From Macrostomum lignano (Eukaryota), in the NCBI GenBank assembly GCA_002269645.1, contig NIVC01002796.1, positions 31-64,030 of the forward strand: a stretch of 64,000 nt of DNA. The letters are read 5' to 3'. The notes under the pieces are model-generated. The model was not told the origin of the DNA and made no database searches. It saw nothing but the letters and a program-made list of their open reading frames with translations. The translations under genes were made by a program, and so were the position numbers. Positions 3,715 to 61,200 of this stretch are shown here, piece by piece (the stretch's first letter is position 1; the number at the start of each line of letters is the position of its first letter).

Positions 3715-3905
3715 GGTTGAAGAGGCTATATGAAAGATAGCCTAGCAGAGAGCCAGCTTGAGTTTTGCTCTCTCAAAGCTGAATTGTGCTCAAGAGCCAA
3801 AAAAACAATACGTATATAGCTCGTGGAAAACTGACAGGCCAGAAGTCAAGAAGCCAAGCCTTGTATTCATATAACTTTTGCCCTCTAGCTCAAACTCAGT
3901 CTGAA

Positions 3906-15678: not shown

Positions 15679-18600
15679 TTAATCGTCCCTGCCGCCGGTG
15701 CCTCGCAGCTCCTCAATCCTGGCGCCCTCCAGTGCAGCGCGCAGCTCCTCCAGTCGGGTGAGCAGTGCGAAGCCCTCCTGGCTGAACTCATCCTCCTCCA
15801 GCTGCCAGCGGGTGCAGCTCAGCCGGTTGCGCAGTTTTCTCAGTGTGACCGACTGGTAGTACAGGTAGAACAGGTGCACAAAGTTCCTGGTATTCTGCGC
15901 CAGCACGTCTAGCATTGTGCGGCGTCGAGGCGCCAGACCGATGAGGCGCCGTAGCAGAGAGACCAGCAGCCAGGCCGCCAGGTTGCGGCCCTCCAACAGC
16001 AGGTTGAGCGGTGCCGGCAGCGGGGAGCGCTTGGTGAACTCCCGGCTGAGGTCGTAGCGCTCAAATAGCCAGAGCGACTTGGACTCGGAGTCGACCATAT
16101 CGACGGTCTTGCTGAACATGGCCACGATGACGTTCAGGAGCAGCACCTGCACGATCACGATGTACGCTGCCATGAGACCGTACGGCACCAGCACATTGCC
16201 AGGGAAGCCGACGCACTTCTCTGCAATCATTGACTCCGTTGCCAGCTGGGTGGACACGTTGGCGCTTGTTGGAGCGTCGCACTCTTTCTTCAGGTCGTCC
16301 AGGCCGTACTCGCCTGCTCAGTAGCAATAAGTTCGAGACAGTAGCGATAGGTTGAGCATCATAAATTCATAAGAGATAGCCCACTGAGGGGGGGGGGGTA
16401 GTGCGTCGGCTAAAGTACATTGGTTCGATTCAGCGCGTGACCGCATTAATTTGGGGCTCAATGTACGTACACTTGGTGAGTCACGATGAGAAATTCAAGT
16501 GCCGCTGTGCTCCCTGTGTGAGCGTGTGTATGAGTTTATGAGTCTGCTTTTAGTTATTCATGCTTATATACTTGTAAATTGTCTCTTGACGTGCTAGGGG
16601 GCTGTAGCCTAGTGGTCAGAGCGTCGGACTCACGACTTGAAGGTCGGGGGTTCGATTCTCAACTCACTCGGAATAATTTATATCCATGAGCAAGACACTT
16701 AACTCTGCATTGCTTCAGTTCACCCAGCTGTAAAATGGGTGCCAGCATTAGCTGGGGTAATTGAGGGTGTGTGTGGCGACCCCCCAGTCCTTGGACTGAA
16801 CAGCCGTACGCAGCCTTCAGATGCGCCGCGCAATAGCTGCGGCTGAGCTGTCGGTTGCGCATCTCTTTCATCTGATTTACTCACCAACAATAGTATAAAA
16901 GGTCCTGTGAAACATTTCCACAAGAATCTCCGCTGTTGGAATCTCGTTGATGCGGCCCTGGCTGTAGAACTTTGCATTTGGCCACAGGAGGGCGTGGAAA
17001 GTGGTTCCGAATCCCACCATGATCACCACAAGGATGTACAGAAACGGGATGAAGTCCTTTCTGACGATGAGAGACAGCATCTTCAGCTTGACGCCGACAG
17101 ACTCGAGCACCACTGAGATGTAGAGGATGCGAATCCAGAAGATCAGCGTGGTGATGACTATCAGTACGTAGCTGACGTCGCCCCAGCCTTTGCCGTGCTC
17201 GCTGAGCATGCCGCCGAGCACCAGCAGATGTTGCGAATCCATCTGTCTGGCTGCAAAGGCCAGGAAGCCGCAGAGGATTGCAACCAGGTCCATGGCATTC
17301 CAGCCGTCAGTCAGGTAGACCGCCAGTGTCTCCTGGCGCCAAGCGGAGACCACCTCGCGCAGCTCCTCGACTAGAACGCCAAGCAGGGTCAGGTAGCAGA
17401 ACACCTCTGTGGGGCTGGCGTCTCCCTGAAAATGAAAAAGGGCACTCCGCGTTGTAAGGGTTGGGAGACTGCCGATTAGCGCCAGTGATCTTTAATCTCT
17501 TCCTGTTTAAACTTTAGATCCTCCAAATTAATTAGTAAATATTTTGTATCCTTCGATTGACTGCATTTTTTGGACAGGGGTCTAAAGTCGGAGCTGGAGC
17601 TGAATTAACCTCGTATTTCAAAGCACAGCTTTGGCCACTTGCTCCGCCCTCCATTGTGTCCTCTCGCACTTTTTTATATTTTCTCCTCTCTGCTCTCCTC
17701 TCTCTTCTCTCTCCCCCATCTCCTCTCTGCTCTCTCTTCTCTCTCCCCCCATCTCCTCTCTGCTCTCTCTTCTCTCTCTCCCCCATCTCCTCTCTGCTCT
17801 CTCTTCTCTCTCCCCCATCTCCTCTCTGCTCTCTCTTCTCTCTCTCCCCCATCTCCTCTCTGCTCTCTCTTCTCTCTCTCTCCCATCTCCTCTCTGCTCT
17901 TCTCTCTCTCCCCGATCTTCTCTCTGCTCTCTCTTCTCTCTCTCCCCCATCTCCTCTCTGCTCTCTCTTCTCTCTCCCCCATCTCCTCTCTGCTCTCTCT
18001 TCTCTCTCCCCCATCTCCTCTCTGCTCTCTCTTCTCTCTCTCCCCCATCTCCTCTCTGCTCTCTCTTCTCTCTCTCCCCCATCTTCTCTCTGCTCTCTCT
18101 TCTCTCTCTCCCCCATCTCCTCTCTGCTCTCTCTTCTCTCTCCCCCATCTCCTCTCTGCTCTCTCTTCTCTCTCCCCCCTTCTTCTCTCTGCTCTCTCTT
18201 CTCTCTCCCCCATCTCCTCTCTGCTCTCTCTTCTCTCTCTCCCCCATCTCCTCTCTGCTCTCTCTTCTCTCTCTCCCCCATCTCCTCTCTGCTCTTCTCT
18301 CTCCCCCATCTCCTCTCTGCTCTCTCTTCTCTCTCTCCCCCATCTCCTCTCTGAACTTCTCTCTCTCCCCCATCTCCTCTCTGCTCTTCTCTCTCCCCCA
18401 TCTCCTCTCTGAACTTCTCTCTCTCCCCCATCTCCTCTCTGCTCTTCTCTCTCCCCCATCTCCTCTCTGCTCTCTCTTCTCTCTCCCCCCATCTCCTCTC
18501 TGCTCTCTCTTCTCTCTCTCTCCCATCTCCTCTCTGCTCTTCTCTCTCTCCCCGATCTTCTCTCTGCTCTCTCTTCTCTCTCTCCCCCATCTCCTCTCTG

Positions 18601-42397: not shown

Positions 42398-42866
42398 AAG
42401 TAACAAAATGTTATTTTTTAATCTGTGAATCATTTGATTTTTTCATCTCGAGTCAAGCAGGCTTTGCCAGCCGGTCGAACGCAGAACTCGGTGGGGTTTG
42501 TGGCGCTCAGGTGGCGCTCAGGTGGCGCTCAGGTGGCGCTCAGGTCCTGGCGCCTCTGTCGATCGGCGGCGGCTGTGCCGGGTGGCGCGGCTCGCCGTCC
42601 TCGTCGTAGGCGTCCAGAAAGCCAAGATGCTGCTCAGCCGCGGCCGCTTCAACCACGGCGGGAGCGACGGCGGCGGCGGGGGCGATGCCCAGCTGCGGGA
42701 GTTCCGGGACAGCAGCGGTAAACACATCTGGTTGTCGCGCCAGAGTCCCTGGTTCGACTCTGTGCGCGAACATATTAACTTGGGACTTGTGCACGGATCT
42801 GAGGTGCGAATCTCACTCGTGAGGGCAGGGAGATTGTACATGCCCGATGATAGGAAGGTCCGGACC

Positions 42867-42945
42867 GCTGCACACCCTGTGTGAGCGTGTGCCTGCGTGC
42901 GTATCCGCGCTTACGTACTGCGTGTGCGTGCTCAGAGATTAGCGG
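42867..42945 (+). mobile_element. Short dispersed element, family copy
   Basis: GCTGCACACCCTGTGTGAGCGTGTGCCTGCG...TGCTCAG. Confidence 0.6.
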
Positions 42946-43003
42946 AGTGGACGGAATTGGATTGAAGGAACCCAAATCCTAAACACCCTAACCCTAACCC
43001 CAA

Positions 43004-43190
43004 ACACACAAACCCTCATCTAAACACGCAAACCCTCATCTAAACACACAAACCCTCATCTAAACACACAAACCCTCATCTAAACACACAAACCCTCATC
43101 TAAACACACAAACCCTCATCTAAACACACAAACCCTCATCTAAACACACAAACCCTCATCTAAACACACAAACCCTCATCTAAACACACA
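43004..43190. repeat. 20-bp minisatellite (TAAACACACAAACCCTCATC)n
   Basis: About 9 units. Confidence 0.95.
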
Positions 43191-43278
43191 AAAATACACT
43201 AAACCCCTTCATAGCAACCCAAACCCAGTCATCTGGACAGCACCCAGACACACAGAGCTCCCATCCCGGGCAGCCTAC

Positions 43279-46200
43279 CTCGGGATGCGACACGGTCAGC
43301 CGGTACTCGTCCTCGCTATTATTCGGGCTGGCCTCTCGGTTCTGAGCTTCCAGGTTCAACTGCCGGAACGAGGCCACCCTGGGCACGGACAGGAAGTCGT
43401 CCGCCTCGGACACGCTGTCCCTGTGACCGCCGCCTCCGCCGCCTCCGCCGCCGCCTCCCAGAACCCGGCGCTGCCATTTCCTCTGGCGGTTGAGCTCAGC
43501 CCATCGCTTCCGCTCCGCCTCCTGCAAGCCAGAAAGAGAGACGGTTTAAGGAAAAAACAGACTTTATGTTCGAACTTCCCCAATTCAGCTTTTCTGCACC
43601 AATCTGCACTTTGACCATTGTTGGTGAGGATGCGAGTCTCAATCTAGTCTTCACTGATCTGCACTTTGACCATTGTTGGTGAGGATGCGAGTCTCAATCT
43701 AGTCTTCACTGATCTGCACTTTGACCATTGTTAGTGAGGATGCGAGTCTCAATCTAGTCTTCACTGATCTGCACTTTGACCATTGTTGGTGAGGATGCGA
43801 GTCTCAATCTAGTCTTCACTGATCTGCACTTTGACCATTGTTGGTGAGGATGCGAGTCTCAATCTAGTCTTCACTGATCTGCACTTTGACCATTGTTGGT
43901 GAGGATGCGAGTCTCAATCTAGTCTTCACTGATCTGCACTTTGACCATTGTTGGTGAGGATGCGAGTCTCAATCTAGTCTTCACTGATCTGCACTTTGAC
44001 CATTGTTGGTGAGGATGCGAGTCTCAATCTAGTCTTCACTGATCTGCACTTTGACCATTGTTGGTGAGGATGCGAGTCTCAATCTAGCCTTCACTGATCT
44101 GCACTTTGACCATTGTTGATGAGGATGCGAGTCTCAATCTAGTCTTCACTGATCTGCACTTTGACCATTGTTGGTGAGGATGCGAGTCTCAATCTAGTCT
44201 TCACTGATCTGCACTTTGACCATTGTTGGTGAGGATGCGAGTCTCAATCTGGCCTTCACTGATCTGCACTTTGACCATTGTTGGTGAGGATGCGAGTCTC
44301 AATCTAGTCTTCACTGATCTGCACTTTGACCATTGTTGGTGAGGATGCGAGTCTCAATCTAGTCTTCACTGATCTGCACTTTGACCATTGTTGGTGAGGA
44401 TGCGAGTCTCAATCTATTCTTCACTGATCTGCTCTTTAATCATTGTATAAACTTTCAACCGGGCACAATATCAATTCCACAGCTGATGCTCTGTCCTGAT
44501 TTTTGATTGGCTCGCCTCGTCCCTTCGTGTACAAACTTCATCACGTGACTGCCTTCCCTTTATCTTATATATGTTGCACTCCATGGTGCCACTTCTCCTA
44601 AAACTCCTTAACCTAGGATAACCTACTAATTTGTCATATGCTTTGCCTGTCAACATTGTAAGCCAGATCTGACCTCCTCTTTCTGATGCTGCACCAGGTT
44701 CTTCACGTGCTGCAACAGCTCGTCAATCTTCGATTCGGTGGAGTCCTCGTCCTTAGCGGACAGGCAGAGAGCCCGGTTCATTGGGAAAAAGTCGTATTTT
44801 TCCTCTATGAGCTGCGGGTGGGTTTAGTGAGGCAGTCATTTACAGGACGTACATGGATACGTTTATGTACACAGGCACACAGATTGTGCATGTACACAGG
44901 CACACAGATTGTGCATGTACACAGGCACACGGATTGTGCATGTACACAGGCACACGGATTGTGCATGTACACAGGCACACGGATTGTGCATGTACACAGG
45001 CACACGGATTGTGCATGTACACAGGCACACGGATTGTGCATGTACACAGGCACACGGATTGTGCATGTACACAGGCACACGGATTGTGCATGTACACAGG
45101 CACACGGATTGTGCATGTACACAGGCACACGGATTGTGCATGTACACAGGCACACGGATTGTGCATGTACACAGGCACACGGATTGTGCATGTACACAGG
45201 CACACGGATTGTGCATGTACACAGGCACACGGATTGTGCATGTACACAGGCACACGGATTGTGCATGTACACAGGCACACGGATGCGTACATGTACACAG
45301 GCACACGGAAGCGTAAATGTACACAGGCACACGGATTGTGCATGTACACGTACAGGCACACGCTCACACAGGGTGCTTAGCGGCTTCGACTTTCTTTTTT
45401 GTCAGACACCGAGGAATACGAGTATGAGCGCGCAAGGACTCAAACCGGGGACCTGGACTTTGGGGCCACCCAAAAGGGAGCGCCATAGGAAATTGTTTTT
45501 GCCATTTTTTGAGGCTGCAGATGAAAAGTTTTGAACTACTTGAAACGCCTCTTGAAGCCAACACAGAGGCTAAAAATTTAAGCAACGCATCTGATTAGTA
45601 AAAATGGCGGCCCCGGACACCGAAAATGGCGCTCTCGCTGACACCCAAAGTGGCACCCGTACAACCCAAAGCGGCGCTTCGACACCTAAAACGGCGCTCC
45701 GACACCAAAAACGGCGCCCCGACACCCTAAATGGCGCCCTCTCCGACACCCAAAATGGCGCCCTCTACGACACCCAAAATGGCGCCCTCTACGACACCCA
45801 AAATGGCGCCCTCTCCGACACCCAAAATGGCGCCCTCTCCGACACCCAAAATGGCGCCCTCTCCGACACCCGAAATGGCGCCCTCTCCGACACCCAAAGT
45901 GGCGCCCTCTACGACACCCAAAATGGCGCCCTCTACGACACTCAAAATGGCGCCCTCTCCGACACCCAAAATGGCGCCCTCTCCGACACCCGAAATGGCG
46001 CCCTCTCCGACACCCAAAGTGGCGCCCTCTCCGACACCCAAAATGGCGCCCTCTCCGACACCCGAAATGGCGCCCTCTCCGACACCCAAAGTGGCGCCCT
46101 CTCCGACACCCAAAGTGGCGCCCTCTCCGACACCGAAATGGCGCCCTCTCCGACACCCAAAGTGGCGCCCTCTCCGACACCCAAAGTGGCGCCCTCTCCG

Positions 46201-49200
46201 ACACCGAAAGTGGCGCCCTCTCCGACACCGAAAGTGGTGCCCTCTCCGACACCCAAAGTGGCGCCCTCTCCGACACCCAAAGTGGCGCCCTCTCCGACAC
46301 CCAAAGTGGCGCCCTCTCCGACACCCAAAGTGGCGCCCTCTCCGACACCAAAAGTGGCGCCCTCTCCGACACCCAAAGTGGCGCCCTCTCCGACACCAAA
46401 AGTGGCGCCCTCTCCGACACCCAAATTGCATTCTCTCGAAGCAAAAAGAATCACAACGACGAAAAAAGTAAAAGTACAAAGCGAACCCACCAGTTTGTAC
46501 ACGTGCAGCTCCAACGAGGTGTAGTCATTCTTGGCCGTGTCCTGCAGGTGAATGAAGAAGAATATGTAGGCCCACATGTTGTGCTCGTTGCGCACGTGAT
46601 AGTCGAAGCCCTGGCCGTGGTGCTCGAAATCGTAGTTGCTGCGCGAGCAGATGAAGCAGTTGTCGCGCATGTCCACCTCGGCTGTCCATTTCATGTTGCG
46701 CAGCTCGCTGAACGTGTCAACAATGATGCCGAAGATGATGTTGAGGCCGACCGTGGTGATCAGGATGAAGAACACGATGTGAAATATGGCCATCCAGAAG
46801 AATGAGTCGAAGGTTGGCGAGTCCTCGCGAGGCACCATGTTCTGCGGGAGTTGAGGTGGGATTTGGGATTCTTGAGACAGCCAAGTGTCAGCGGAAACAG
46901 TAGAGTGACAGAGGAGACAGTAGAGTGACAGAGGAGACAGTAGAGTGACAGAGAAGAGAGTAGAGTGACAATGCAGACATCTGAGTGACAGAGAAAACAG
47001 TAGAGTGACAGAGAAGAGAGTAGAGTGACAGAGGAGACAGTAGAGTGACAGAGGAGACAGTAGAGTGACAGAGAAGAGAGTAGAGTGACAGAGGAGACAG
47101 TAGAGTAACAGAGGAGAGAGTAGAGTGACAGTGCAGACATCAGAGTGACAAAGAAAACAGTAGAGTGACAAAGGAGACAGTAGAGTGACAGAGGAGACAG
47201 TAGAGTGACAGAGGAGACAGTAGAGTGACAGAGGAGACAGTAGAGTGACAGAGGAGACAGTAGAGTGACAGAGGAGACAGTAGAGTGACAGAGGAGACAG
47301 TAGAGTGACAGAGGAGACAGTAGAGTGACAGAGGAGACAGTAGAGTGACAGAGGAGACAGTAGAGTGACAGAGGAGACATCAGAGTGACAGAGGAGACAG
47401 TAGAGTGACAGAGGAGACAGTAGAGGGAAAAATGACAGGCAGCGAAGCATCGGGAGCGACAGTAGGGTGATACATAAAGTAGTGAACTGCCTCAGAAGCC
47501 AGACTCAGGGCACTGCTGCGGTCCTCACCTCGAACAGATCCCCAATGAGTCCAAAGCGCAACACGGTCACAAAGCATTGGCTGAGGTCCGAGCAGAACAT
47601 GAGGCCGCCGAAACCTCGGCGAAGCCTTGCGAAAGCCAGCACGGAGAACAGGTACATGATGGCGATGCCCAGCACAGACACCCAGATCAGGGAGAGGCCT
47701 GAGCAGGTTCGGTGGGGAATTTGTTATATTTTGACTGCCTCCACGTTTGAGACAAGGCTCAAACGACAACTGCTAGAGACAACTGGTTAGAGACAACTGG
47801 CTAGAGACAACTGACAAGAGACAACTGGCTAGAGACAACTGGCTAGAGACAACTGGCTAGAGACAACTGGCTAGAGACAACTGGCTAGAGACAACTGACT
47901 AGAAACAACTGACTAGAGACAACTAACTAGAGACAACTGACTAGAGACAACTGACTAGAGACAACTGACTAGAGACAACTGACTAGAGACAACTGACTAG
48001 AGACAACTGACTAGAGACAACTGACTAGAGACAACTGACTAGAGACAACTGACTAGAGACAACTGGCTAGAGACAACTGACTAGAGACAACTGACTAGAG
48101 ACAACTGACTAGAGACAACTGACTAGAAACAACTGACTAGAGACAACTGACTAGAGACAACTGGCTAGAGACAACTGACTAGAGACAACTGACTAGAGAC
48201 AACTGACTAGAGACAACTGACTAGAGACAACTGACTAGAAACAACTGACTAGAGACAACTGACTAGAAACAACTGACTAGAAACAACTGACTAGAAACAA
48301 CTGACTAGAGACAGCCGACTGTCTCACCATTCATGGTGACAGCCTGAATGACTCCCTGCAGCAGCTGGTTATTGTTGACCATGTTCAGCAGGTGGAAGGC
48401 GAAGAAGTACGGACAGTAAAAAGTGCCAGCAAAGGCGCAGGCGGCGAAGGACAAGTAGTACAGCGTGGCTATGCTGAACAGGTTGACAGCCAGTTTGTTG
48501 CCGCCCTCGCTGCCGCGGTCCCTGCAGTCGGCCGGGTCGTCCTCTTCGTCGGCTTTGGCGCGGCGCAGGCGGCGCAGCCGATCCCGGATGCGGCGCACGT
48601 TCGGCGGCTCCGGATGGTTGGCAACGAAGAAGGCCAACAGGATGACTATGGCCAGGATGTCCATGGTGTACGCGAATGCATCCTTCCACATCTCCAGGTG
48701 CTCGAACTGCGACTTCCAGCGGGCAGATTCGCTGATCAGAATTGGAGTTGGGAACAGATTGCTCAGCCTGAGGCTGGGATTCTGGTTGGCTCATTTCCAC
48801 ATGGATTTGATTGGCTCACAACCACTCGAATCTGATTGGATCACTCAAATCTGATTGGCTCACACTCACTAGAATCTGATTGGCTGTGACTCACTCGAAT
48901 CTGATTGGCTAAGAGTCGCTTAAATCTGATTGGCTCACACTCACTGGAATCTGATTGGCTGTGACTCACTCGAATCTGATTGGCTAAGAGTCGCTTGAAT
49001 CTGATTGGCTTACACTCACTGGAATCTGATTGGCTGTGGCTCATTCGAATCTGATTGGCTAAGAGTCGCTTGAATCTGATTGGCTTACACTCACTGGTAT
49101 CTGATTGGCTGTGGCTCATTCGAGTCTAATTGTCTCAGACTCACTCGAATCCGATTGGCTTACACTCAGTCGACTCGAATCTGATCTTGGCTCACACTCA

Positions 49201-52200
49201 CTCGCATCTGAATGGCTCGGACTCACTGGAATTTGATTGGCTCTCACTCCCTCGAATCTGATTGGCTCACACAAACTTTTATTGGAAATGAGTAAACATG
49301 TACAAAAAAATAGACTTCATTTTTAAAAAAGGAGCAATAAAAAGGCTAATCAAATTGCGCTCACTTGGCCGGAATGGTAAACATGCCAGTGTCCGCCAGC
49401 ATTGTGGGCGTGTCAGTAGCTTCCAGGCCAATCAGCATGATTAGGTTGATAATAACGGCAGTCAAGGTTGCGGCGTGGTTCCAGATGAGCCACAGTCGAG
49501 TCAGCAATATAGTAAACGGGTTTGACAGCACTTTCTTCTGATAGTGAATGTCCTTCAGTATAGCCTTAGTCCAGTCCATGAAGTCGCGGATCTTCGTGCT
49601 GGGCGAGGACCTGTCCACGTTCCATTTCAGCTTCTCTTTGAGTTCTTCGCGGAGAACATTCTGAATTATGAGATTTACAGTAGTGGATTTTTTATGTTTG
49701 ATAGCACTATTTATACTACTTACTAACTAATAAGTAGCATTTGACAGAACTTGCCTTGTTTCTCACTCGAAAGTGAACCTTCTGCAGGTTGTCATTTTTC
49801 AGAATCTCAATTGTCATTGCGTTCTTTTTGAAGAATTTGAATGCCTTCTGCTGAATGTCGCTAATCTGCAGCTCTGTAAATTAACGAATGGATTGTAAGA
49901 ATAATAATAAGAGGATGCAGAGAAAGGGTGGGGAGAGGAGGGTGAAGAGAGAAGGGTGGGGAAAAGAGGGTGGGGAGAAGAGGGTGGGGAGAAGAGGGTT
50001 GGGAGAAGAGGATGGGGAGAAGAGGGTGGGGAGAAGAGGGTGGGGAAAAGAGGGTGGGGAGAAGAGGGTGGGGAGAAGAGGGTGGGGAGAAGAGGGTGGG
50101 GAGAAGGAGGGTGGGGAGAAGAGGGTGGGAAGAAGAGGGTGGGAGAAGATGGTGGGGAGAGAAGGGTGGGGAGATGGTGGTATGCAACAGACAAAGAATA
50201 GGATTCAGATCAAGAACTAAAATAGAAAAAATACCACAGAAAAACGATTGCACTGAACAGATTTGATAGACAAAATAGATAAGGACACGATTTGTCAGAA
50301 TAATTTTTAGCAGCAAATAGCAGCAAAGGCAAAGAAGAAAATCAATTTGTTCTGCTTGCTTTAATAAAAGTAAAAAAGCGCCAGTGCGAGCTGTGTAACT
50401 CTTCTGATTTCGATGAAGACATTTCTGCCCCGCTTGTGCCTGTCACTCATGTAATTAAGATTATGTTTGCTACAATTGTTTGCAGTCATTTTATAGTGCT
50501 TCTCTTCACATCTTAAGAAAAAGACCGTGACCAATAAATCAATAATTAAAACGGATTAATATTTAATCGCCGACTTAATACGAGGACAGGCAAAGGTAGG
50601 CATTTTTTCGGGTTTACCTCTTCCATACGGGTCTGAATCTGCAAGCATTGGAGCAGCAAAGAGATCAGTTGAGGATCAATGGTGGCAGGGTTAATGAGAT
50701 TAAAGGAACTCAATTTGTATGCAAGTCAGCAGTGGTTGAGCACAGTAAAGCACAACATCAGCTAGCTTGGGATTCAAAGCGATATGGATTCGGTTGATTG
50801 CTAGCTCAGGTGTTTGCTAAGCTGTTCTACATGACCAACTTCTCAGAGCTGAGTTTGGCGATGGACTCACCTTTCTTGCCCATGGCCGGGTCAATGTCGT
50901 ACAGCCGGGCCAGGATCACGTAGAACGTGAAGCCGACCTCGCACATGGCCTCCTTGAGCTCGCGGTTCTCCTCCTTCTTCTGCAATGGGTTGGCGAAGTG
51001 GGCTGAAATGGGATTCTGGCGATGGAGATCATTATGGGATTCTAGTGATGTAAACCATTATGGGATTATGGTGATGGAGATCATTTTAGGATTCTGGTGA
51101 TGGAGATCATTTTGGGATTCTGGTGATGGAGATCATTTTGGGATTCTGGTGATGGAGATCATTATGGGATTCTGGTGATGGAAATCATTTTGGGATTCTG
51201 GTGATGGAGATCATTATGGGATTCTGGTGATGGAGATCATTATGGGATTCTGGTGATGGAGATCATTTTGGGATTCTGGTGATGGAGATCATTATGGGAT
51301 TCTAGTGATGGAGATCATTATGGGATTCTAGTGATGTAAACCATTATGGGATTATGGTGATGGAGATCATTATGGGATTCTGGTGATGGAGATCATTTTG
51401 GGATTCTGGTGATGGAGATCATTATGGGATTCTGGTGATGGAGATCATTATGGGATTCTGGTGATGGAGATCATTTTGGGATTCTGGTGATGGAGATCAT
51501 TATGGGATTCTAGTGATGGAGATCATTTTGGGATTCTGGTGATGGAGATCATTATGGGATTCTAGTGATGGAGATCATTATGGGATTCTAGTGATGTAAA
51601 CCATTATGGGATTATGGTGATGGAGATCATTTTGGGATTCTGGTGATGGAGATCATTTTGGGATTCTGGTGATGGAGATCATTTTGGGATTCTGGTGATG
51701 GAGATCATTATGGGATTCTGGTGATGGAGATCATTTTGGGATTCTGGTGATGGAGATCATTATGGGATTCTGGTGATGGAGATCATTTTGGGATTCTGGT
51801 GATGGAGATCATTATGGGATTCTGGTGATGGAGATCATTATGGGATTCTGGTGATGGAGATAATTATGGGATTATGGTGATGGAGATAATTATGGGATTC
51901 TGGTGATGGAGATCATTATGGGATTCTGGTGATGGAGATCATTATGGGATTCTGGTGATGGAGATCATTATGGGATTCTGGTGATGGAGATCATTATGGG
52001 ATTATGGTGCTGTAAACCATTATGGGATTCTGGTGATGGAGATCATTATGGGATTATGGTGATGTAGATCATTATGGGATTATGGTGATGGAGATCATTA
52101 TGGGATTATGGTGCTGTAAACCATTATGGGATTCTGCTGATGTAAACCATTATAGGATTCTGGTGATGGAAATCATTATGGGATTCTGACGATCACCAAT

Positions 52201-55200
52201 GGTCCCGTCGAGATCCCTCAGGATCATTCCCCAAACGCAGGGCAAACGGAGCGCCCGCATCTGAGACGTCAGGTCGCTCCAACTCACAAAGAGTCGCACA
52301 AGGAATCCGCCGTCCTTGCCAGTCCGCTGCTGGGCCTCGTAGCACTCGGACATGGCCCGGTAGAGAGCGCCCTTGTCCAGCGTGTCCTTCACCTCCCTAG
52401 CGATTACCAGAGCCTCGGGAGAATTCTCCTCAATCAGCGAGATCACCAGGTTGGCGATGGTCTGGCGCAGTTGCACCACCTGCTGAGGCTCGCAGCTTTC
52501 GAAGTCGGAGCTGCGCAGAATGAAGTTTATATAGTCGATGATTTTGTTGTCGTACACGGTTGCCCGGTTCTCCTGGTTGCCCTGGATCATTGTTTGCGGG
52601 ATTTTTGTAGTCTGTAATATTCTTGAGTAATTGAAGACTCCGGGAGAATAACAAGAAGAGAAATATCAACACAAACATTTAATGTCTACGCGTTTCGCCT
52701 ATCCGACGACTTTCCAGTTGATTTTTTTTAAGTTCCAAAGATCAGGAGAACTTCTTTAAACTCATTAACTACACTCACTTCAACATGAAACTCACGGATG
52801 AGGGAGGTGACAAGAAAACCGCAGGGACATCATGGCGGTGACCATGGCCCTCTCTCGCTCTCTAGGCATCGTTACCTCCAGTGAAACATCCGCAATGAGG
52901 AATGCCCCCTTCTGCCTCTCCGGTGATGAGAATGCGAAGCACTTCATCTGTGAGTGCCCCGCCTTTACTCAGGACAGGCTCACCTACCTCGGCGCAAACC
53001 CGGGCCTTTCCGACGTTGGAAAGCCTCAGAATATCTGCCAGCTCGTCCGCTACCGGGCGAGCGACCATCCACCTCCTGGACTCTCCGGATCTCCCTGCGC
53101 GACACCGCAGCACCAACTGCCCGAGGTTGTCAGAGGTTAGCGCAATGGGCGTCGACGCCTCCCCGCTGTATCCGGATGCCCAGAACCCCCTGTAGCTGAG
53201 TCAAGTCAAGTAAAGAGATGACAAGAAACTCCCATTTTCTTGACACCGAAGTGGAGTGTACTGGAAGCTCTTTTGGTACCAAGGTTTACCGAGAGCCCGG
53301 AGCTGATGCTGAACTAAAATAATTGAAAAATGGCCTGGTAAGATGGTTCATGCACAGAGCCTTATGATGTGTGCAGCTCATGGGACTTGTTTCACCAAGA
53401 AGGGCCTCACCTTGACCAACTTTCTCAGAACTAATAGCTACCACAAGGTCTCATCAATCGCACGGTCTTGCCGCTGAAAAATGACTTCTAGGCTGAACAA
53501 GCCTCCTAACCTGGATCCTGATGATACTTTCTTAATTTTGATTTCATTTTCGGAGCAAATCTCACCCCATTAAAAAGTTTGAGAAAAGTTTCCATCAATG
53601 AAAAAACGAGGCCGTTTTGTGAGTATAGATTCAAATCCATTGCGCTCTTTCCGTCAAGGCTCGTGTTGCAGACTCGATCGGTAGGATGAGACCCCGATCC
53701 AGAAAATCTTGGTCCTATCTGACCTCTCTTACTGTACACCAGGTGCTCACAGCCATCTGAGCAACCCAGCTGACAAAGCAACTCACAGCACAGAACTCAT
53801 TAACCGTGGAGAACAGCTGGATGAGCAAATCGATCGTGTCACCGTTGATATTCGAGTAGGCAACGTTGATGAACTGGGAGACTTCGGCCACGATGTTGAA
53901 CGACTTGATGTTGTCCGGCTGCTCGCGCAGGTAGTTCTGCAGACCAAAGTGCTGCCCGTCGCAGATGCTGGCCAGGACCTTCAGCACCAGGGCGATGTAG
54001 CCGTCGTCTTTCATAGAGATCGTCTCATCTTCATCGTGAGTCTGGCTAGCCAGGTTTTCCTGTCGGGATAGAGCGCTGGCAATTGACTTTCCGCGTGTCT
54101 ATAATGCACCACTTTGCATAGGACGATTGCATTGAAATAATATTTAACCAACAATTGACATTCGACTTCTTTTTCTTTAGTTTTTTGGAGCGGTTTAGCG
54201 TCCTATTCCCAACTACAATACTTTAATTAACTAAAGTAAATAATAACAATAATAATATATATAATAGTAAATAGTAATAGTAAATAATAACAAACAATAA
54301 TATTGCACACAAAAACTAAATTGTGGCACACCTTCTGACGAAAATTTCCCTTTTTGAACTGTTAGCCAGCTGCAATGACAGCCAAATTTACTTTGTACTT
54401 GCATTTGACTGGAAACATTTGAAACACAGAGACTCACCACCTCAGCACCGGAGTCGGAGCTGGCCGATTCTTCCAGCAGGCTCTGCGCCATCGGCTCCTG
54501 ACTCTCGCCTTTCAGCCCGTTGGCGAATGCCACCTTCTTGTTGCCACTGCCGCCGCTCTTCTTGCCACTGCTGTTGCTCGGCGTTTGACTGCCAGACTCT
54601 TTGCGACGTTTGGTCATCATTGACTGCGACTGCATCTTGGTGAGGCTGACTCGGCGCTGCAGTTAACCAAGAATTCTATCATTTGTCTTGCTCTGTTCAT
54701 AGTGACTTCTCTGTGCTAACGAGTGAAAGATACAGCATAAGTTAGGCCTTACCGTGAGATCATTGTTGGCCTGTTCAATCTTCATCTCGATGCGGTACTG
54801 CTTGATTTGCTGCACGATAAATTATGATGGTCGATTTTCAAATTTAAAACGAAACGAGCTTTAAACAGTATGGGCATGAGCGAGCAGGTGTACTCGTAGT
54901 ATCGAAGTCGCCAATGGCGGTTGTGATGCCCTCTCTGGTCCACTAAAGTCACCAATAGCTGGTTGCGATGCCCTCTCTGGTCCACTAAAGTCACCAATAG
55001 CTGGTTGCGATGCCCTCTCTGGTTCACTAAAGTCACCAATAGCTGGTTGCGATGCCCTCTCTGGTCCACTAAAGTCACCAATAGCTGGTTGCGATGCCCT
55101 CTCTGGTCCACTAAAGTCACCAATAGCTGGTTGCGACGCCCTCTCTGGTTCACTAAAGTCACCAATAGCTGGTTGCGATGCCCTCTCTGGTTTACTAAAG

Positions 55201-58200
55201 TCACCAATAGCTGGTTGTGATGCCCTCTCTGGTCCACTAAAGTCACCAATAGCTGGTTGTGATGCCCTCTCTGGTCCACTAAAGTCACCAATAGCTGGTT
55301 GCGATGCCCTCTCTGGTCCACTAAAGTCACCAATAGCTGGTTGCGATGCCCTCTCTGGTTCACTAAAGTCACCAATAGCTGGTTGTGATGCCCTCTCTGG
55401 TTACTAAAGTCACCAATAGCTGGTTGTGATGCCCTCTCTGGTTTACTAAAGTCACCAATAGCTGGTTGTGATGCCCTCTCTGGTTTACTAAAGTCACCAA
55501 TAGCTGGTTGCGATGCCCTCTCTGGTTCACTAAAGTCACCAATAGCTGGTTGTGATGCCCTCTCTGGTTACTAAAGTCACCAATAGCTGGTTGTGATGCC
55601 CTCTCTGGTTACTAAAGTCACCAATAGCTGGTTGCGATGCCCTCTCTGGTTACTAATGTCACCAATAGCTGGTTGCGATGCCCTCTCTGGTTACTAAAGT
55701 CACCAATAACTGGTTGTGATGCCCTCTCTGGTTACTAAAGTCACCAATAACTGGTTGTGATGCCCTCTCTGGTTACTAATGTCACCAACAGCTGTTGCGA
55801 CGCCCTCTCCGGGTCACCTAAAGTCAACTACAGCGGTTGTGGTGCCCTACCAGCTTGTCACTTGGTAAATTTGTCAGACCAAACCGAAATCCATTTCATG
55901 CTATCCATTCACATTAGCTCCGTCTCACCTGCAAAGCCTTGATCCCTAGAGTCATGGTAGCTCTGAGGTTCTCAGCCTGAGATTTGGCTTCTGACTGGCG
56001 CGCCTTTTGTTGCGAGATCAGCAGACGGCGCTCTTTGATGTTGGCCGTGGACATCTGCAGGCGATTTCGCACCGCGTAAAAGAACACTTCTTCCTTCGTG
56101 TGTAGAAAGTAGTTCAGCATGCTCTCCTGTTGGAATAACAAAATTAGGTTAATTGCTTTAAGTAGTAAGGTGTGTGTTTTTTATACTGTTTTACGAAATA
56201 TGCGTGACATACCTGAACCCTCTCATTAGCGTTAAACAGCATCATGCCAAGCAGTGAAAGCACCTCCTTGGCTACTAGGCTGCTGGTGGAAGCCAGATGC
56301 GGCAAAGCGTGCTTCACTAGTTCGAACGAGTTGAGCGTTGTTTGAATGTCCGATATGTTGCGAAGGCCCCTGAAAATCGATTTATTTTGCGTTGTAAAAA
56401 TTCTAACAAAGTTTTTTCTTGAATGATGAATTGTCGTCATCTAGATCTCTAGAGAGATTTATTTAAAAATGAGTAGAAAAAATAAGACAAAAGTTTTGCC
56501 CCGTGTGAGGATCGAACTCACGGCCTTCAGATTATGAGACTGACGCGCTACCTACTGCGCTAACGAGGCAACTGGCACCATATTGCCCGAGAAAGGCATT
56601 TCACTAATACTCCTATATAAGGTCTCTATACTCACTTTTTCACTCGAAACTCCGTGGTTCGAACCTCCCAGTCAGCCGGGAGTTTTCTCTCCTCGTTGTG
56701 CATGAAGGCGCGCAGAATCTGCAGGATGCGAACCGTCAGGCGCTCTTGCTCGCGTCGGAGCTTCGTCTCCGTGCTCGTAGTTGGCACGTGGGTGGTGCCG
56801 CTGGTTGTCGCACAGATTCTTCGGGTTGAATAATTAAATTCCTAGATCAGCTAGGGATTCGTTTAATGAATCTTGTTTAACCGCCCTACCTGAGTCCGTT
56901 GACCAGCAGCGCGCCCAGTTTGTACCGCTGCTCAGGCTTCCGGCTGCCCATGCCGATGAGGCAGCGCACGTGACTCTGAAACTCCTCGTCGAGGGCAGCG
57001 CCTCGTCGCCTCCGATTGTGGTGTACTCTGCGTGCGACAGTCAGACAGTAGTGCAAATGTACGATTAAGCATCCTTACTGTAGTGAGGCATAAAAGTTGT
57101 AAAAGTACTGACTGCACTACCTCTATTGGAGTTGACCTTCAATTGCGCTTTCACCGTGTTGTGACCGCCCCACAGCAGGCTGAGATTAACAGCCAACGAT
57201 TTTAGCTTAGTGTTGAGAATGATCTCCTGTTCATAATACTCTTTGTTTCCCTGAAAGTGTTTAGATTCAAACAAAATAGCTACACTGAGCAATGGCAACG
57301 TGAATTTTTCGTCAAGTACTAAGCGCGCTGTTCGTACCGATTTCATCTGGGACACTGTGTCCTGCAGTTTAGTGCCTTTGCCGATGTTCTCCACCACTGG
57401 CTCCATGATCTGCGTGATTGCAACAATTTGGATAGCGGTTTTGGTGCAAGCTACAGGGGGTGTAGCCTAGTGGTTAGAGCGTCGGACTCACGACTTGAAG
57501 GTCGGGGGTTCGATTCTCGACCCCACTGGAACAATTTGTGTCCTTGAGCAAGACACTTAACTCTGCACTGCTTCAGTTCACCCAGCTGTAAAATGGGTGC
57601 CAGCATTAGCTGGGGGTAATTGAGGCTGTGTGGCGACCCCCCCCCCCCCAAGTCCTTGGACTGAACAGCCGTACGCAGCCTTCAGATGCGCCGCGCAATA
57701 GCTGCGGCTGAGCTGTCGGTTGCAAATCTGACCATTTGGGCAGGTGTAATCAATTATTACTATGAAGGGCAGTCTGTAAGGCCCAGCATCAGGTGTCTAT
57801 AGTACGTGTCTACCCGTATGTCCGTATGTGCCTGCATCAGCATCCACATGCCTGCTCAGGCGAGCTTATGTGCGCGAAGACTTCAATGGTGTGCTCAGTC
57901 ACCCGACTCGTAAAGCCATCATCGAAAGCAAAACAGATTAGAAAACTTACCGAGGGGGATGTGAGCTGCGCTTCACGATGCAGCTGAGGCAGCTGACCAT
58001 CTGCGTCAGCACCTTCGGCTCCACAACAATGGAAGCCAGCTGGCAGCAGAACTCCACCGCGCCTGTAGTCATGCGGTCGAATATCTCGCGCTCGTTTTGA
58101 AAGTCTTTGTCCTCATCGACTACGTAGAACTTCTGCGCGAACGCCTGCAGGAAAGGAAACACCGCGTCGAACACGTAGTGCAGCGACGAGTGCCCGCGGT

Positions 58201-61200
58201 AGTCGTCTTCCCTCATTTTAACCACCGCGCTGAAATCGTAGAGTGAAACTGCGTCATGCTTGCTACTGTAGCTAGTATATTTGGGCTTGAGACTTACTTT
58301 TCAAGGTTGAGTTTTAACGGCTTAGATTCGTCCTCAGAGACTAGGGACGAGCAAAGCGGACAGGTATCGTGAAGTCGCATTCTGCGAATGTGATTGTCAA
58401 TACAAACCGTAGATGCAGCTAAGCTCCTCAATGACTAATTGAAGGCATTTTCAAGGACTACTAAATTACACGCAAAATAGTTTGTACATCTAACGCAACT
58501 GGACAATGCCGGTAGCTTGGCTGATTCAGAGAAGCTCATGCAGTTTAACTTACTTTCAGCCAAACTGAGTCAAGTAAAGGTGATCGAAGGCCTCAAAACA
58601 AAGAAATATTGCGTTATAAAATTATTGATATCAGGCATTTTATACATTTTAAGATAGCTTTGATAAAACAACGCTGCATAAACGAAAATCTCACATCTTA
58701 GGAAATGGCTTTGCAGTCATAAAGTACACCGTGTCCCTGTCTGCATCGTCCCGAATCCAGTAGGCCAGTCCAAGGAGCTCTCGTCCCAGATGATCCAGGT
58801 AGTCCCAGATTTGCCTGGGTATTTTTTAATACAAGGTTTCTTATTGTTATATCAGCGATTCTTTATAGATACAAAATGGATATCAGGATCCTTGTGTGCT
58901 AAGAAGGCCATCTTGCAACGACATAGCAACTAATTTACGCAACAGCGAACTAAAGAAAACAGTTTATTTAATTATTTTTCTAGCGCACATAGAAGGCAAC
59001 CGAAAAAAAACTAAGCAAATAAAAAAGTGACATTGAGGAGTTCTAATGGAAAAAACAGTAAAGAAGCAGAAATCTTCTTACCATGTAACACTGAAAATGG
59101 TAGAAAGTAAAGTTAATTATATATTGGTAAAAATACCAAGAAATTCGTAACCTAAAAGCGAGTACAGCGCACTTACCTATCATGAATGATGTCTAGCGAT
59201 CGATTCTCTCCCGCCGCGGCCGTGGTCTTCATGTAAGCAAAAAACATGTACCGAAGAAATGGCTTCTTCAGGTGGTTTTCCACGTCGGGATCGTTGAGAA
59301 TGCCGAGAATCTCCTGCACGCTGAGGATGGTCTGACAGAGCGATTCGATGTAGCGGTTCTCGCCTCGGCGCAGGTGGCCAACAGGTCGATGAAGCTGACG
59401 AGGTACTGGCAGTGATCGGCCCCTCTGTTGCCATTCAGGACGTCCATTCTGCATGTGGCAAATTTAAACCGATGAAGTTTCGTTGCTACCCTGTTGTTAA
59501 CTAAAAGCTGACGAGGTACTAAATGAAAGTCACGTAATAACCTGAGTTTTATTTGTCGTGCTTCCTCCAAAAGGCAAAGCAGATGGACAATAACCTGCTT
59601 AAGGTACTAACTTATGCTTGGAATTCCTTGGAATTAAGGTGTACATGCCTGACGATTAGAAAGTCAGGTACACTCTGTACACCCTGACTTTATGACTTTA
59701 TACACCCTGTACACCCTGTGTGAGCGTGTGTATGAGTGCGTGCCTGAGTACAGTACTGGCGCGCTTGCATGTGCTCAGGAGTCAGCGGAATGGGCAGAAT
59801 TGCCTCCGCGCTGGTTGTGGGACAATGGTGGCCACATAGTCTTACTCCGAATGCATACTTAATATAGGCGTGTTTTAAAAACTTTAAGACCCACCTGTCC
59901 TTGACGCTGCACTGCTCAAGAATGTAGGCCACGCGGCTGTAGTTCTGCATGATATACTTCATCACGAGAGTTTGATTTCGCTTCAGCGCTAATCCGGTGC
60001 CCTCCACCTTGACGATGGCGACAGCAGTTCGAGAAACTCGGGCGCCCTCTCCTGGTGCTCGGCCACCAAGTACACAATTCGCAGAATCTGCTTGGGCAGA
60101 ACGCGCAGGCAGAGCTCTTGGTTGTTGGCAAACACCTCCTTGAGCGCCAAGGCCAGGTCGGACTCGACGAGACGCACGCGAAGTAAGTCATCCAGGTGAG
60201 CGAATACCTGCTCCTGAACATCCGGATACCGAAGCGTCAGGGCTTTCAACAGGCGGACCGCCTTTCTAAGCACCCCGGCCGTCTCTACGTAGTTTTCGGA
60301 CAGCTGAGCGTCCGTCTCCGTGGCCAAGATGTCGAATATGACGGGTAGAATGTCTGCAACAAAATCAGTGACCCATAGCTGAAAGAAGCTCGAACAGACG
60401 AATCCAAAAGTGTTCTGTAAAGTCACTTCAACAGCGAGATAAACAGGGATATGAAACCGTGGCTTACTATGACTGATCATAAGCCGTTGGTTCATCGGAT
60501 GCGGCTCCTCCTCAGCCTTGGGCAGGTGGCAGAGTTCGTACAGTTCGCCCAGGATGGTCTGCATCTTGCGCGCCTGCTCCGCGTCCATTTGCTCCTGGCT
60601 GTCATGCGCAGCAGAGGCACCTGCTTGCTGACCTCGCGATGAACCCGACAGGAGTCCGGCGTTGTCAGCACCAGCGAGTTGATTGCCCGTTGAAACATTG
60701 AGCTCTTGGATGAGTAGAGCTTGTTGAGCAGCTGCAGCGATAGCTCCACCATGGGGTCGTACTCATAGTTAGCGAGATCCTGCAAGTCAGCAAATTGATG
60801 CTTTCGAATGGCGTATCGAAATTGGTTGAGATTGTTAGTATTAACCCAATCAGTAGCATGAGGGCTGTTCAACGGTAGAATGAGGCTTTCAACGGTAGAA
60901 TGAGGGCTGTTCAACGGTTAGAATGAGGCTTTCAACGGTAGAATGAGGGCTGTTCAACGGTAGAATGAGGGCTGTTCAACGGTAGAATGAGGCTGTTCAA
61001 CGGTAGAATGAAGGCTGTCAACGGTAGAATGAGGGCTTTCAACGGTAGAATGAAGGCTGTTCAACGTAGAATGAGGGCTGTTCAACGGTAGAATGAGGAC
61101 TGTTCAACGGTAGAATGAGGCTGTTCAAGTAGAATGAGGGACTGTTCAACGGTAGAATGAGGACTGTTCAACGGTAGAATGAGGGACTGTTCAACGGTAG

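What the first reader, a model, noticed from the sequence alone, without database searches (positions are those of the whole stretch)
47529..47580. IP3R-like channel with a non-canonical selectivity filter (LRFGLIGD instead of LRSGGGVGD)
Seen: the pore exon (47698-47529, in frame, good splice sites) encodes [16 protein letters not shown], just before the S6 exon. Known: IP3R and RyR filters are GGGVGD and GGGIGD. Here the motif is one residue shorter and has Leu before the I-G-D. The RIH-associated domain also lacks the GLGLLGL insert of canonical ITPRs. Inference: this is a member of a divergent ITPR-like clade with potentially altered conductance or selectivity. The variant may also occur in other invertebrate paralogs.
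Basis: partly seen in the sequence, partly recalled or inferred. Interest (0 to 1): 0.7.

Follow-up and report, generated by a model that had tools for sequence, protein, structure and literature searches.

The report
IP3R-like channel lacking the glycine filter
The exon is the real pore-forming piece of a flatworm calcium-release-channel relative (third, "IP3R-B"-type branch of the IP3 receptor/ryanodine receptor superfamily) whose ion filter reads GLIGDLFE instead of GGGxGD; the unusual filter is conserved in flatworms, molluscs, annelids and a nemertean, but nobody has tested what it conducts.

Summary
Observation confirmed. Minus-strand exon 47698-47529 has AG/GT splice sites and starts in phase 1. 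It encodes S5, a short turret, the pore helix and [16 protein letters not shown], and joins the S6/zinc-finger exon 46841-46491.

It is not a sequence error. A Macrostomum lignano protein fragment is identical across the exon. 24 of 188 retrieved relatives carry R[YF]G[LV][IVLM]G[D/A/N]xx[DE]; the named ones span Platyhelminthes, Mollusca, Annelida and Nemertea. A snail orthologue has the same exon with the same intron positions and phases.

In a bootstrapped tree the gene groups with Capsaspora CAOG_04510 and choanoflagellate proteins, apart from ITPR2 and RyR1 (99%). This most likely corresponds to the already described IP3R-B family.

Two alignments and an AlphaFold comparison with a canonical control place the filter loop 2 residues shorter. 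The terminal E/D of G-D-x-x-[E/D], not the D of IGD, sits at the canonical Asp position.

The S6 gate, the zinc finger and the Ca2+-sensor acidic residues are retained. A conducting cation channel with a carboxylate-lined filter is therefore the best reading, but it is untested.

The gene carries at least 7 single-base homopolymer frameshifts elsewhere, which look like assembly errors. Moderate interest.

The parts
47529..47698 (-). Pore exon: S5 helix ([23 protein letters not shown], 47696-47628), short luminal turret, pore helix and filter loop. It starts in phase 1 and ends in phase 0.
   Evidence: Sequence and splice sites; joined reading frame; best splice solution; same exon with the same intron positions and phases in the snail Candidula.
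47547..47588 (-). Pore helix [14 protein letters not shown], equivalent to CIVTVLNQGL of ITPR2.
   Evidence: HMMER alignment to ITPR2. The AlphaFold model of the snail orthologue has the helix LWQCTVTVIRYGLI.
47529..47552 (-). Filter loop GLIGDLFE (GLIGD = 47552-47538), the non-canonical replacement of GGG[IV]GD.
   Evidence: Coordinates. Clade conservation: G 100%, [LV] 100%, [IVLM] 100%, G 100%, D 91%, x, x, [ED] 100% in 22 sequences. Alignments.
46491..46841 (-). Exon with the post-filter loop, S6 ([38 protein letters not shown], 46811-46698, gate F and I kept) and the C-terminal zinc finger CFIC...H..H (46658-46581).
   Evidence: (alignment to ITPR2).
48328..48731 (-). Transmembrane exon upstream of the pore exon (S2-S4 region), ending ...VIQAVTMN+G.
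49365..49660 (-). Exon with the pre-S1 region and first transmembrane helix ([13 protein letters not shown]...[12 protein letters not shown]...).
42540..44811 (-). Three C-terminal exons: 44811-44674 ([11 protein letters not shown]..., start of the C-terminal helix), 43521-43279, and 42692-42540 including the stop codon.
   Evidence: All junctions are GT..CAG and the reading frame ends ...DRGART*.
52288..54059 (-). Two exons (54059-53787 and 52581-52288) encoding the RIH-associated domain. It holds the Ca2+-sensor equivalents D (53960-53958, aligned to hIP3R3 E1882) and E (53798-53796, aligned to E1946). It lacks the GLGLLGL insert.
   Evidence: Pfam RIH_assoc 1.5e-18; alignment to 6dqj numbering; coordinates.
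59894..60779 (-). Exon block encoding the second RIH domain. It has a small in-frame intron (about 60468-60355) and two single-base frameshifts (about 60604 and 60020).
   Evidence: Pfam RYDR_ITPR 1.5e-07.
42540..63998 (-). Whole in-window part of the gene: about 30 exons and about 2086 codons. The first roughly 600 codons (suppressor and IP3-binding domains) lie beyond the window end at 64000. Approximate exon list (hi-lo): 63998-63825, 63673-63541, 63437-63319, 63210-62981, 62216-62124, 62055-61939, 61603-61505, 60779-60469, 60354-59895, 59448-59177, 58814-58695, 58381-58298, 58229-57951, 57409-57137, 57034-56890, 56818-56636, 56369-56213, 56126-55929, 54809-54756, 54629-54439, 54059-53787, 52581-52288, 50979-50871, 49873-49755, 49660-49365, 48731-48328, 47698-47529, 46841-46491, 44811-44674, 43521-43279, 42692-42540.
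   Evidence: tblastn with paralogues and orthologues; splice solver; manual junctions; assembled protein. Upstream exon ends are approximate.

Best explanation
The exon is the pore module of a large tetrameric intracellular cation channel of the IP3R/RyR superfamily. The channel belongs to a third branch, the 'IP3R-B' type, and the source is the free-living flatworm Macrostomum lignano or a very close relative. Shown: the gene has the IP3R-type architecture (RIH, RIH-associated, six-helix channel domain, C-terminal zinc finger). Its filter loop is a lineage-conserved derived form, R-[Y/F]-G-[L/V]-[I/V/L/M]-G-D-x-x-[E/D], and the exon is orthologous to the pore exon of a snail gene. Inferred: the glycine triplet was lost by a two-residue shortening. 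The last two filter glycines became G-D, and the conserved terminal E/D sits where the canonical filter Asp sits. Ions would then pass two rings of carboxylate side chains (D and E/D) separated by a hydrophobic turn, not a glycine backbone-carbonyl cage. This resembles the short [L/I]-G-D filters between two pore helices in polycystin-type TRP channels. The S6 gate residues, the DTFSELR extension, the zinc finger and both acidic Ca2+-sensor positions are kept. The most likely function is therefore a Ca2+-regulated, cation-conducting ER channel with conductance and divalent/monovalent selectivity different from IP3R and RyR. The activating ligand is unknown. IP3 cannot be assumed, because the IP3-binding region lies outside the window. 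The confidence of 0.7 is a composite: identity as the pore exon of an IP3R-B-type channel with a conserved derived filter is about 0.95, and the claim that it conducts cations with altered properties is about 0.55.
For: Identity: PDB hits ITPR2 7.9e-33 and RyR about 1e-24; Pfam RIH + RIH_assoc + Ion_trans. Full-length orthologue Pomacea P0191 and Capsaspora P0059 have Ins145_P3_rec + MIR + RIH + RIH_assoc + Ion_trans and no SPRY or RyR repeats. The Foldseek top hits of the orthologue model are all IP3R or RyR channel domains (E about 1e-11). Source organism: P0058 (M. lignano A0A1I8I413) is identical across the exon. Conservation: 24 of 188 relatives carry the motif. Within 22 clade members R, [YF], G, [LV], [IVLM] and G are 100%, D is 91% and the terminal acid is 100%, while the following loop is variable. 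Named taxa: M. lignano paralogues, Candidula, Biomphalaria, Lymnaea, Patella, Pomacea, Octopus, Capitella, Dimorphilus, Tubulanus. Orthologous exon in Candidula with identical intron positions and phases. Family placement: the GLIGD core is separated in 92% of NJ bootstraps; the window with Capsaspora CAOG_04510 and choanoflagellates is separated from ITPR2, RyR1 and the chytrid type in 99%. Filter homology: MAFFT auto and L-INS-i both give GLI--GDLFE against GLRNGGGVGD, GVRAGGGIGD and GLLSGGGLGE. AlphaFold: variant ...RYGLI | coil GD | helix LFEI; canonical control ...HRGLL | coil MGGG | helix VGDYLTT. Retained machinery: S6 [16 protein letters not shown] and CFIC...H...H align with ITPR2; D aligns to E1882 and E to E1946 of hIP3R3. 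Analogy: the PKD2 filter is L641-G642-D643 (PMC11630642).
Against: No functional data exist for any animal member. By my recollection of Alzayady et al. 2015 (supported by the citing sentence in PMC9113742), the one IP3R-B tested, from Capsaspora, did not bind IP3 or release Ca2+ in response to it. In mammalian IP3R and RyR, as I recall the literature, mutating the filter glycines or the Asp abolishes or cripples conduction. Conduction through a filter without them is therefore an assumption. The AlphaFold models are monomers from shallow alignments (25-32 sequences). pLDDT is only about 62-79 around the filter, and no pore radius could be derived. This copy carries at least 7 frameshifts in the assembly. 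The IP3R-B label rests on co-clustering with a Capsaspora protein that is not IP3R-A. I could not read the naming paper or its accession list.
Confidence: 0.7

Rival explanations
1. The protein is a non-conducting or modulatory subunit, a 'pseudo-channel'. Having lost the GGG filter, it no longer passes ions on its own. It acts as a scaffold or sensor, or co-assembles with canonical IP3R subunits to tune them.
For: The canonical GGG[IV]GD is absent. The Capsaspora IP3R-B gave no IP3-evoked release (Alzayady 2015, as cited, plus my memory of the abstract). Sister lineages carry still more degenerate loops: RYGLLESFHE in Saccoglossus, HHGFVDTPY in oysters and FGLENGLAS in Capsaspora.
Against: A dead pore would not be expected to keep a near-invariant loop motif with two conserved acidic positions across four phyla while the adjacent loop drifts. 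It would also not be expected to keep the S6 gate residues. No evidence for hetero-oligomerisation was obtainable here.
Confidence: 0.15
2. This particular copy is a decaying pseudogene among the many duplicated genes of M. lignano, so its filter sequence has no present function.
For: At least 7 reading-frame breaks in about 2086 codons. M. lignano has several paralogues: P0044/P0190 at 74% identity, P0001/P0046 at 63-67%, and P0110.
Against: Every break is a single-base change, mostly in a run of two to four identical bases: six or seven deletions and one insertion. There are no premature stop codons from substitutions and no larger indels. All checked splice sites are intact. The sequence stays 74-93% identical to the paralogue exon by exon. 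This is the pattern of long-read consensus errors. The public M. lignano models of the paralogues are likewise fragmented (1371-1696 aa). The pore exon itself is unbroken.
Confidence: 0.07
3. One reading: LRFG-LIGD corresponds to LRSGGGVGD. I-G-D is then the direct counterpart of V-G-D and the loop is one residue shorter.
For: The IGD/VGD identity is striking. An alignment with a deletion before IGD also lines up the PxxDxP stretch after the filter (my reading).
Against: It breaks the strong upstream anchor C-x-V-T-V-L-x-x-G-L, which is shared by the window and ITPR2. Neither MAFFT mode produces it. The AlphaFold secondary-structure registers of the variant and the canonical control pair LFE with VGD. 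The 100% conserved terminal acid is explained only by the E-to-D alignment.
Confidence: 0.1
4. The GLIGD reading is an assembly or sequencing artefact of this window.
For: The assembly plainly has single-base errors elsewhere in the gene.
Against: The same motif occurs in an identical M. lignano protein record, in three further M. lignano paralogues and in 20 sequences from other phyla and independent assemblies. These include the snail genomic exon read directly.
Confidence: 0.01

Closest known systems
IP3R-B family (Alzayady et al. 2015, Mol Biol Evol 32:2236; exemplar Capsaspora owczarzaki CO.IP3R-B)
   Same: IP3R-type domain architecture without SPRY or RyR repeats. The window groups with the Capsaspora non-A IP3R-like protein CAOG_04510 and with choanoflagellate proteins, apart from ITPR2 and RyR1, in 99% of bootstraps. 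The family is present in invertebrates and was described as lost from vertebrates (my recollection of the abstract). [quoted passage not shown]
   Different: Choanoflagellate and Corallochytrium members still read GLLSGGGLGE, and Capsaspora reads FGLENGLAS. The spiralian branch to which this gene belongs has its own fixed motif, R[YF]GLIGDxx[DE]. I could not confirm that CAOG_04510 is the cloned CO.IP3R-B, because the paper is not held.
Canonical IP3 receptors (IP3R-A; ITPR1-3)
   Same: Best solved-structure match (ITPR2 7.9e-33). They share the pore-helix sequence C-x-V-T-V-L-x-x-G-L, S6 LN-IFG-I-DTF-LR, the CxxC...H...H zinc finger and the acidic Ca2+-sensor positions.
   Different: No GGGVGD. 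The S5-pore luminal loop is about 50 residues shorter: the ITPR2 alignment splits into two stretches, and the 55 ITPR2 residues between them face about 3 in the window protein. The GLGLLGL insert in RIH_assoc is absent. The gene lies outside the ITPR2 branch in the tree. In orthologues only part of the IP3-contact set is recognisable: KERQKLMRN keeps K508 and R511, SRKN stands for YRKN, and the beta-domain RTTGR is not conserved.
Ryanodine receptors
   Same: Short S5-pore loop: the RyR alignment is one continuous stretch, 89-307. Same S6 and zinc-finger core.
   Different: No GGGIGD. Orthologues are 2500-3000 residues with no SPRY or RyR-repeat domains. They are separated from RyR1 in the tree.
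Polycystin-type TRP pore (PKD2 filter L641-G642-D643)
   Same: Works-like analogy only. Both have a short [L/I]-G-D filter directly after the pore helix, followed by a second short helix (AlphaFold model; PKD2 filter residues from PMC11630642).
   Different: No homology beyond the common six-helix cation-channel fold. The gene is an IP3R/RyR-superfamily member by every domain test.

Membership tests
IP3R/RyR superfamily | RIH and RIH-associated domains upstream of a C-terminal six-helix channel domain | tested here: met
   Pfam RYDR_ITPR 1.5e-07, RIH_assoc 1.5e-18 and Ion_trans 2.6e-06 on the in-window protein.
IP3R/RyR superfamily | S6 with LNxIFGxIxDTF and a C-terminal CxxC...H...H zinc finger | tested here: met
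   [17 protein letters not shown] and [26 protein letters not shown] align column for column with ITPR2 and RyR1.
IP3R/RyR superfamily | GGG[IV]GD selectivity filter | tested here: not met
   GLIGDLFE at 47552-47529. The canonical motifs were verified in ITPR2 and RyR1.
IP3R/RyR superfamily | Acidic Ca2+-sensor pair in the RIH-associated/ARM3 region (hIP3R3 E1882 and E1946) | tested here: met
   D aligns to E1882 and E aligns to E1946 in the HMMER alignment to 6dqj. The first change is conservative (E to D).
Canonical IP3R (IP3R-A) | Full set of IP3-contact residues in the IP3-binding core (R265, T266, T267, G268, R269, R504, K508, R511, Y567, R568, K569 of IP3R1; list from memory) | not testable with these tools
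   The first roughly 600 codons lie beyond the window end. In the orthologues Pomacea, Tubulanus and P0048, K508 and R511 are kept and R568/K569 mostly kept, R504 is K, and T266, T267, G268 and Y567 are changed. The beta-domain alignment is ambiguous.
Canonical IP3R (IP3R-A) | Phylogenetic grouping with ITPR1-3 | tested here: not met
   Separated from ITPR2 in 99% of NJ bootstraps. This is a distance tree on 174 columns, not maximum likelihood.
Ryanodine receptor | About 5000 residues with SPRY domains and RyR repeats | tested here: not met
   Full-length orthologues are 2523-2985 residues without SPRY or RyR Pfam hits. The in-window 2086 residues show none either.
IP3R-B (Alzayady 2015) | Holozoan clade distinct from IP3R-A and RyR that contains the Capsaspora non-A IP3R-like protein and invertebrate but no vertebrate members | tested here: met
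   The window groups with Capsaspora CAOG_04510 (not the IP3R-A accession XP_004347577.1 given) and with choanoflagellates, against ITPR2 and RyR1, at 99%. The named members are all invertebrates or unicellular holozoans. That CAOG_04510 is the published CO.IP3R-B could not be checked.
IP3R-B (Alzayady 2015) | No IP3 binding and no IP3-evoked Ca2+ release | not testable with these tools
   A biochemical property. Only the citing sentence in PMC9113742 was available.

The most novel reading that the evidence does not exclude
The bilaterian IP3R-B channels, of which this gene is the flatworm representative, are a functionally distinct class of ER channel. They replaced the glycine-carbonyl filter of IP3R and RyR by a short, carboxylate-lined, polycystin-like filter (pore helix, G-D, second short helix ending in E/D). 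They would therefore have a different ion selectivity, for example much higher divalent affinity or monovalent preference, and a ligand other than IP3. They have been kept for more than half a billion years in Spiralia and lost in vertebrates, ecdysozoans and apparently parasitic flatworms.
Probability: 0.3. Interest if true: 0.7.

Novelty: new member of a known kind. Interest (0 to 1): 0.45.

Why it matters
GGGxGD is treated as the signature of all IP3R/RyR pores and is used to predict that homologues are high-conductance Ca2+-permeable channels (for example PMC3194816).

Here a whole animal branch of the superfamily has dispensed with it, yet it keeps the new motif, the gate and the Ca2+-sensor residues under evident constraint. 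That gives a natural experiment on how the filter sets conductance and selectivity.

It also points to an uncharacterised ER channel type in molluscs, annelids, nemerteans and free-living flatworms. Macrostomum lignano is a transgenic and RNAi-tractable model, so the question can be tested directly.

The family itself is already named, and the genes are already in the databases under automatic 'ITPR-like' labels. This is a lead for channel biologists, not a new kind of system.

Tried and rejected
I used the snail orthologue P0002 (55% identical, [10 protein letters not shown]) and a canonical control, P0032.

2. The paper that defines IP3R-A and IP3R-B (Alzayady 2015) is not held by DOI or PMC id. 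No held paper gives the CO.IP3R-B accession or mentions GLIGD in this sense. The searches for GGVGD/GGIGD evolution papers were mostly noise.

3. P0158 (4930 aa, metagenomic) was tried as a RyR anchor but matches ITPR2 slightly better than RyR. I used the PDB-verified RyR1 4834-5034 instead.

4. HMMER's ungapped pairing of LIGDLFENMV with LRNGGGVGDV was considered. I rejected it in favour of the two-residue-gap alignment supported by MAFFT and by the secondary-structure registers.

5. Pseudogene and sequencing-error readings are dealt with under the rival explanations.

6. I ran no further search on finding the canonical IP3R and RyR of M. lignano. Whether this species also has GGGxGD channels is inferred only from Schistosoma.

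7. Foldseek gives no residue-level superposition, so pore geometry could not be extracted.
Full report
**1. What is in the sequence**

- On the minus strand, the stretch 47698-47529 is bounded by an AG acceptor (47700-47699) and a GT donor (47528-47527).
- Translating from its first base gives stops, but only because the exon begins in phase 1. The previous exon ends ...ATG AAT G|gtgaga at 48328.
- Once joined, the frame is open. It reads ...[109 protein letters not shown]...[26 protein letters not shown]....
- A homology-guided search over all GT/AG pairs picks exactly these junctions as the best solution.
- [16 protein letters not shown] occupies 47576-47529 and GLIGD occupies 47552-47538.

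**2. What gene it is**

- The assembled channel domain matches solved ITPR2 at 7.9e-33 and ryanodine receptors at about 1e-24.
- About 30 exons of the gene lie in the window, from 63998 down to a stop codon at 42542-42540.
- The roughly 2086 in-window residues carry Pfam RIH, RIH_assoc and Ion_trans.
- The first roughly 600 codons, which include the IP3-binding region, lie beyond position 64000.
- A UniProt fragment from Macrostomum lignano (A0A1I8I413, P0058) is identical across the pore exon and the next exon, apart from a missing S6 stretch. The window is therefore from M. lignano or a very close relative.
- That species has further paralogues at 74% and 63-67% identity with the same motif, RFGLIGDLF[DE].

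**3. The motif is conserved, so it is not an error**

- A search of 5.8 billion proteins and an exhaustive scan of 1.84 billion cluster representatives gave 188 relatives.
- 24 carry R[YF]G[LV][IVLM]G[D/A/N]xx[DE], 10 carry a second non-canonical form (HHG[FL]V[ED]G.Y), and 85 carry GGGx[GA][DE].
- Named carriers of the GLIGD type:
  - gastropods Candidula, Biomphalaria, Lymnaea, Patella and Pomacea;
  - Octopus;
  - annelids Capitella and Dimorphilus;
  - the nemertean Tubulanus.
- In 22 clade members R, [YF], G, [LV], [IVLM] and G are invariant as classes. D is 91% and the terminal acid is 100% (E in 14, D in 8). The ten residues that follow are highly variable.
- In the Candidula genome the orthologous exon reads ...[10 protein letters not shown]. 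It has the same two intron positions and phases: QNG|KSLLW in phase 1 and DLFE|IMKP in phase 0.

**4. Which family**

- A neighbour-joining tree of the S5-to-C-terminus region used 174 columns and 157 sequences. PDB-verified ITPR2 and RyR1 served as anchors. It was bootstrapped 200 times.
- The GLIGD core is separated from everything else in 92% of replicates.
- A bilaterian group is recovered in 79%. It comprises the GLIGD type, the mollusc HHG type, and Saccoglossus (RYGLLESFHE) with Branchiostoma (RYGLMENLHK).
- That group, together with Capsaspora CAOG_04510 (FGLENGLAS) and choanoflagellate and Corallochytrium proteins (GLLSGGGLGE), is separated from ITPR2, RyR1 and chytrid-type GGGVGD proteins in 99% (names).
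- CAOG_04510 is not the Capsaspora IP3R-A accession quoted in PMC9522344.
- It and the full-length Pomacea orthologue have the IP3R-type domain set without SPRY or RyR repeats.
- This matches the IP3R-B family of Alzayady et al. [quoted passage not shown]
- I could not read the original paper or check accessions. The label is therefore likely but not proven.

**5. How the variant filter relates to GGGxGD**

- The strong upstream anchor, C-x-V-T-V-L-x-x-G-L, fixes the GL of RFGL onto the GL of ITPR2.
- MAFFT in two modes gives GLI--GDLFE against GLRNGGGVGD, GVRAGGGIGD and GLLSGGGLGE.
- AlphaFold models, run the same way, agree:
  - Snail orthologue: pore helix ...RYGLI, coil GD, short helix LFEI (pLDDT about 62-77).
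  - Canonical relative...HRGLL, coil MGGG, short helix VGDYLTT.
- The loop is thus two residues shorter and G-D replaces the last two glycines. The invariant terminal E/D is the positional counterpart of the canonical filter Asp.
- This part is inference from alignments and from moderate-confidence monomer models.

**6. What it most likely does**

- Retained features:
  - the S6 gate region and DTFSELR;
  - the zinc finger;
  - both acidic Ca2+-sensor positions, with D aligned to E1882 and E aligned to E1946 of human IP3R3.
- The RIH-associated domain indeed lacks the TTGGLGLLGLY insert.
- The best reading is a Ca2+-regulated ER cation channel. Its filter would be lined by two carboxylate rings and not by glycine carbonyls. 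In layout it is reminiscent of the L-G-D filter of polycystin-2 (PMC11630642).
- Orthologues keep some IP3-contact residues (KERQKLMRN, SRKN) but not the RTTGR loop. The ligand is therefore open.

**7. Gene integrity**

- Outside the pore exon the coding sequence has at least seven single-base frame breaks. They lie at about 63085, 63061, 63014, 60604, 60020, 59362 and 56991, perhaps with one more at the 57409 acceptor.
- Most sit in a run of two to four identical bases. There are no substitution stops, and the splice sites are intact.
- This pattern, together with the fragmentary public models of the paralogues, points to long-read assembly errors and not to decay.

**8. Novelty**

- The family is named, and the genes are in the databases under automatic ITPR-like labels.
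- Schistosoma was reported to have only GGGXGD homologues (PMC3194816).
- I found no description of the GLIGD-type filter.
- Verdict: a new member of a known kind, carrying a conserved but uncharacterised filter variant. Interest is moderate.

Noticed in passing
window 56991-63085 (sites near 63085, 63061, 63014, 60604, 60020, 59362, 56991; possibly 57409): At least seven single-base frameshifts in the IP3R-like coding sequence, mostly in short homopolymer runs: six or seven deletions and one extra G. There are no substitution stops. This looks like long-read consensus error and not pseudogene decay. Gene models built on this assembly will be fragmented.
   Followed up: partly
window 15682-17491, minus strand: A second ion-channel gene. 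Two exons (17491-16880 and 16317-15682) encode the S3-S6 region and the TRP box (WLFERYDL) of a TRPM-like channel. The best solved match is TRPM4 at 2e-16, and Pfam gives Ion_trans.
   Followed up: partly
window 42979-61409 (e.g. 47765-48313, 46884-47425, 45616-46425, 44865-45349, 43602-44446, 51008-52188, 54905-55848, 60853-61409): Most of the gene's longer introns hold their own, different minisatellite array, with periods of 14-55 bp and 10-45 copies at 87-98% identity. The two introns flanking the pore exon are almost entirely such arrays.
   Followed up: no
window 62541-62823, 57454-57796, 16662-17022, minus strand: Three copies of one interspersed element whose translation contains [27 protein letters not shown]. 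It resembles a tRNA-derived SINE. Two copies sit in introns of the IP3R-like gene and one in the TRPM-like gene.
   Followed up: no
window about 3800-13000: A unit of roughly 3.5-4 kb is repeated about three times. Each copy has a similar long ORF ([21 protein letters not shown]...) and a V/G-rich microsatellite ORF. The ORF has no Pfam match.
   Followed up: no
protein P0001 (M. lignano A0A1I8FJM8), not in the window: This public model reads RFGFDWRLVRN where its paralogues read [11 protein letters not shown]. The odd stretch could be a shifted-frame reading of the LIGDLFEN codons. If so, the record would carry a compensated frame error across the filter and not a third filter type. I could not check this, because no DNA was available.
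   Followed up: no
relatives P0053, P0018, P0019, P0011, P0052 (molluscs); P0057 (Saccoglossus); P0054 (Branchiostoma): Sister branches of the same family have other GGG-less loops: HHG[FL]V[ED]G.Y in molluscs and RYGL[LM]E[SN][FL]H[EK] in a hemichordate and a cephalochordate. Choanoflagellate members keep GGGLGE. The loss of the glycine triplet therefore seems to be general to bilaterian members.
   Followed up: partly
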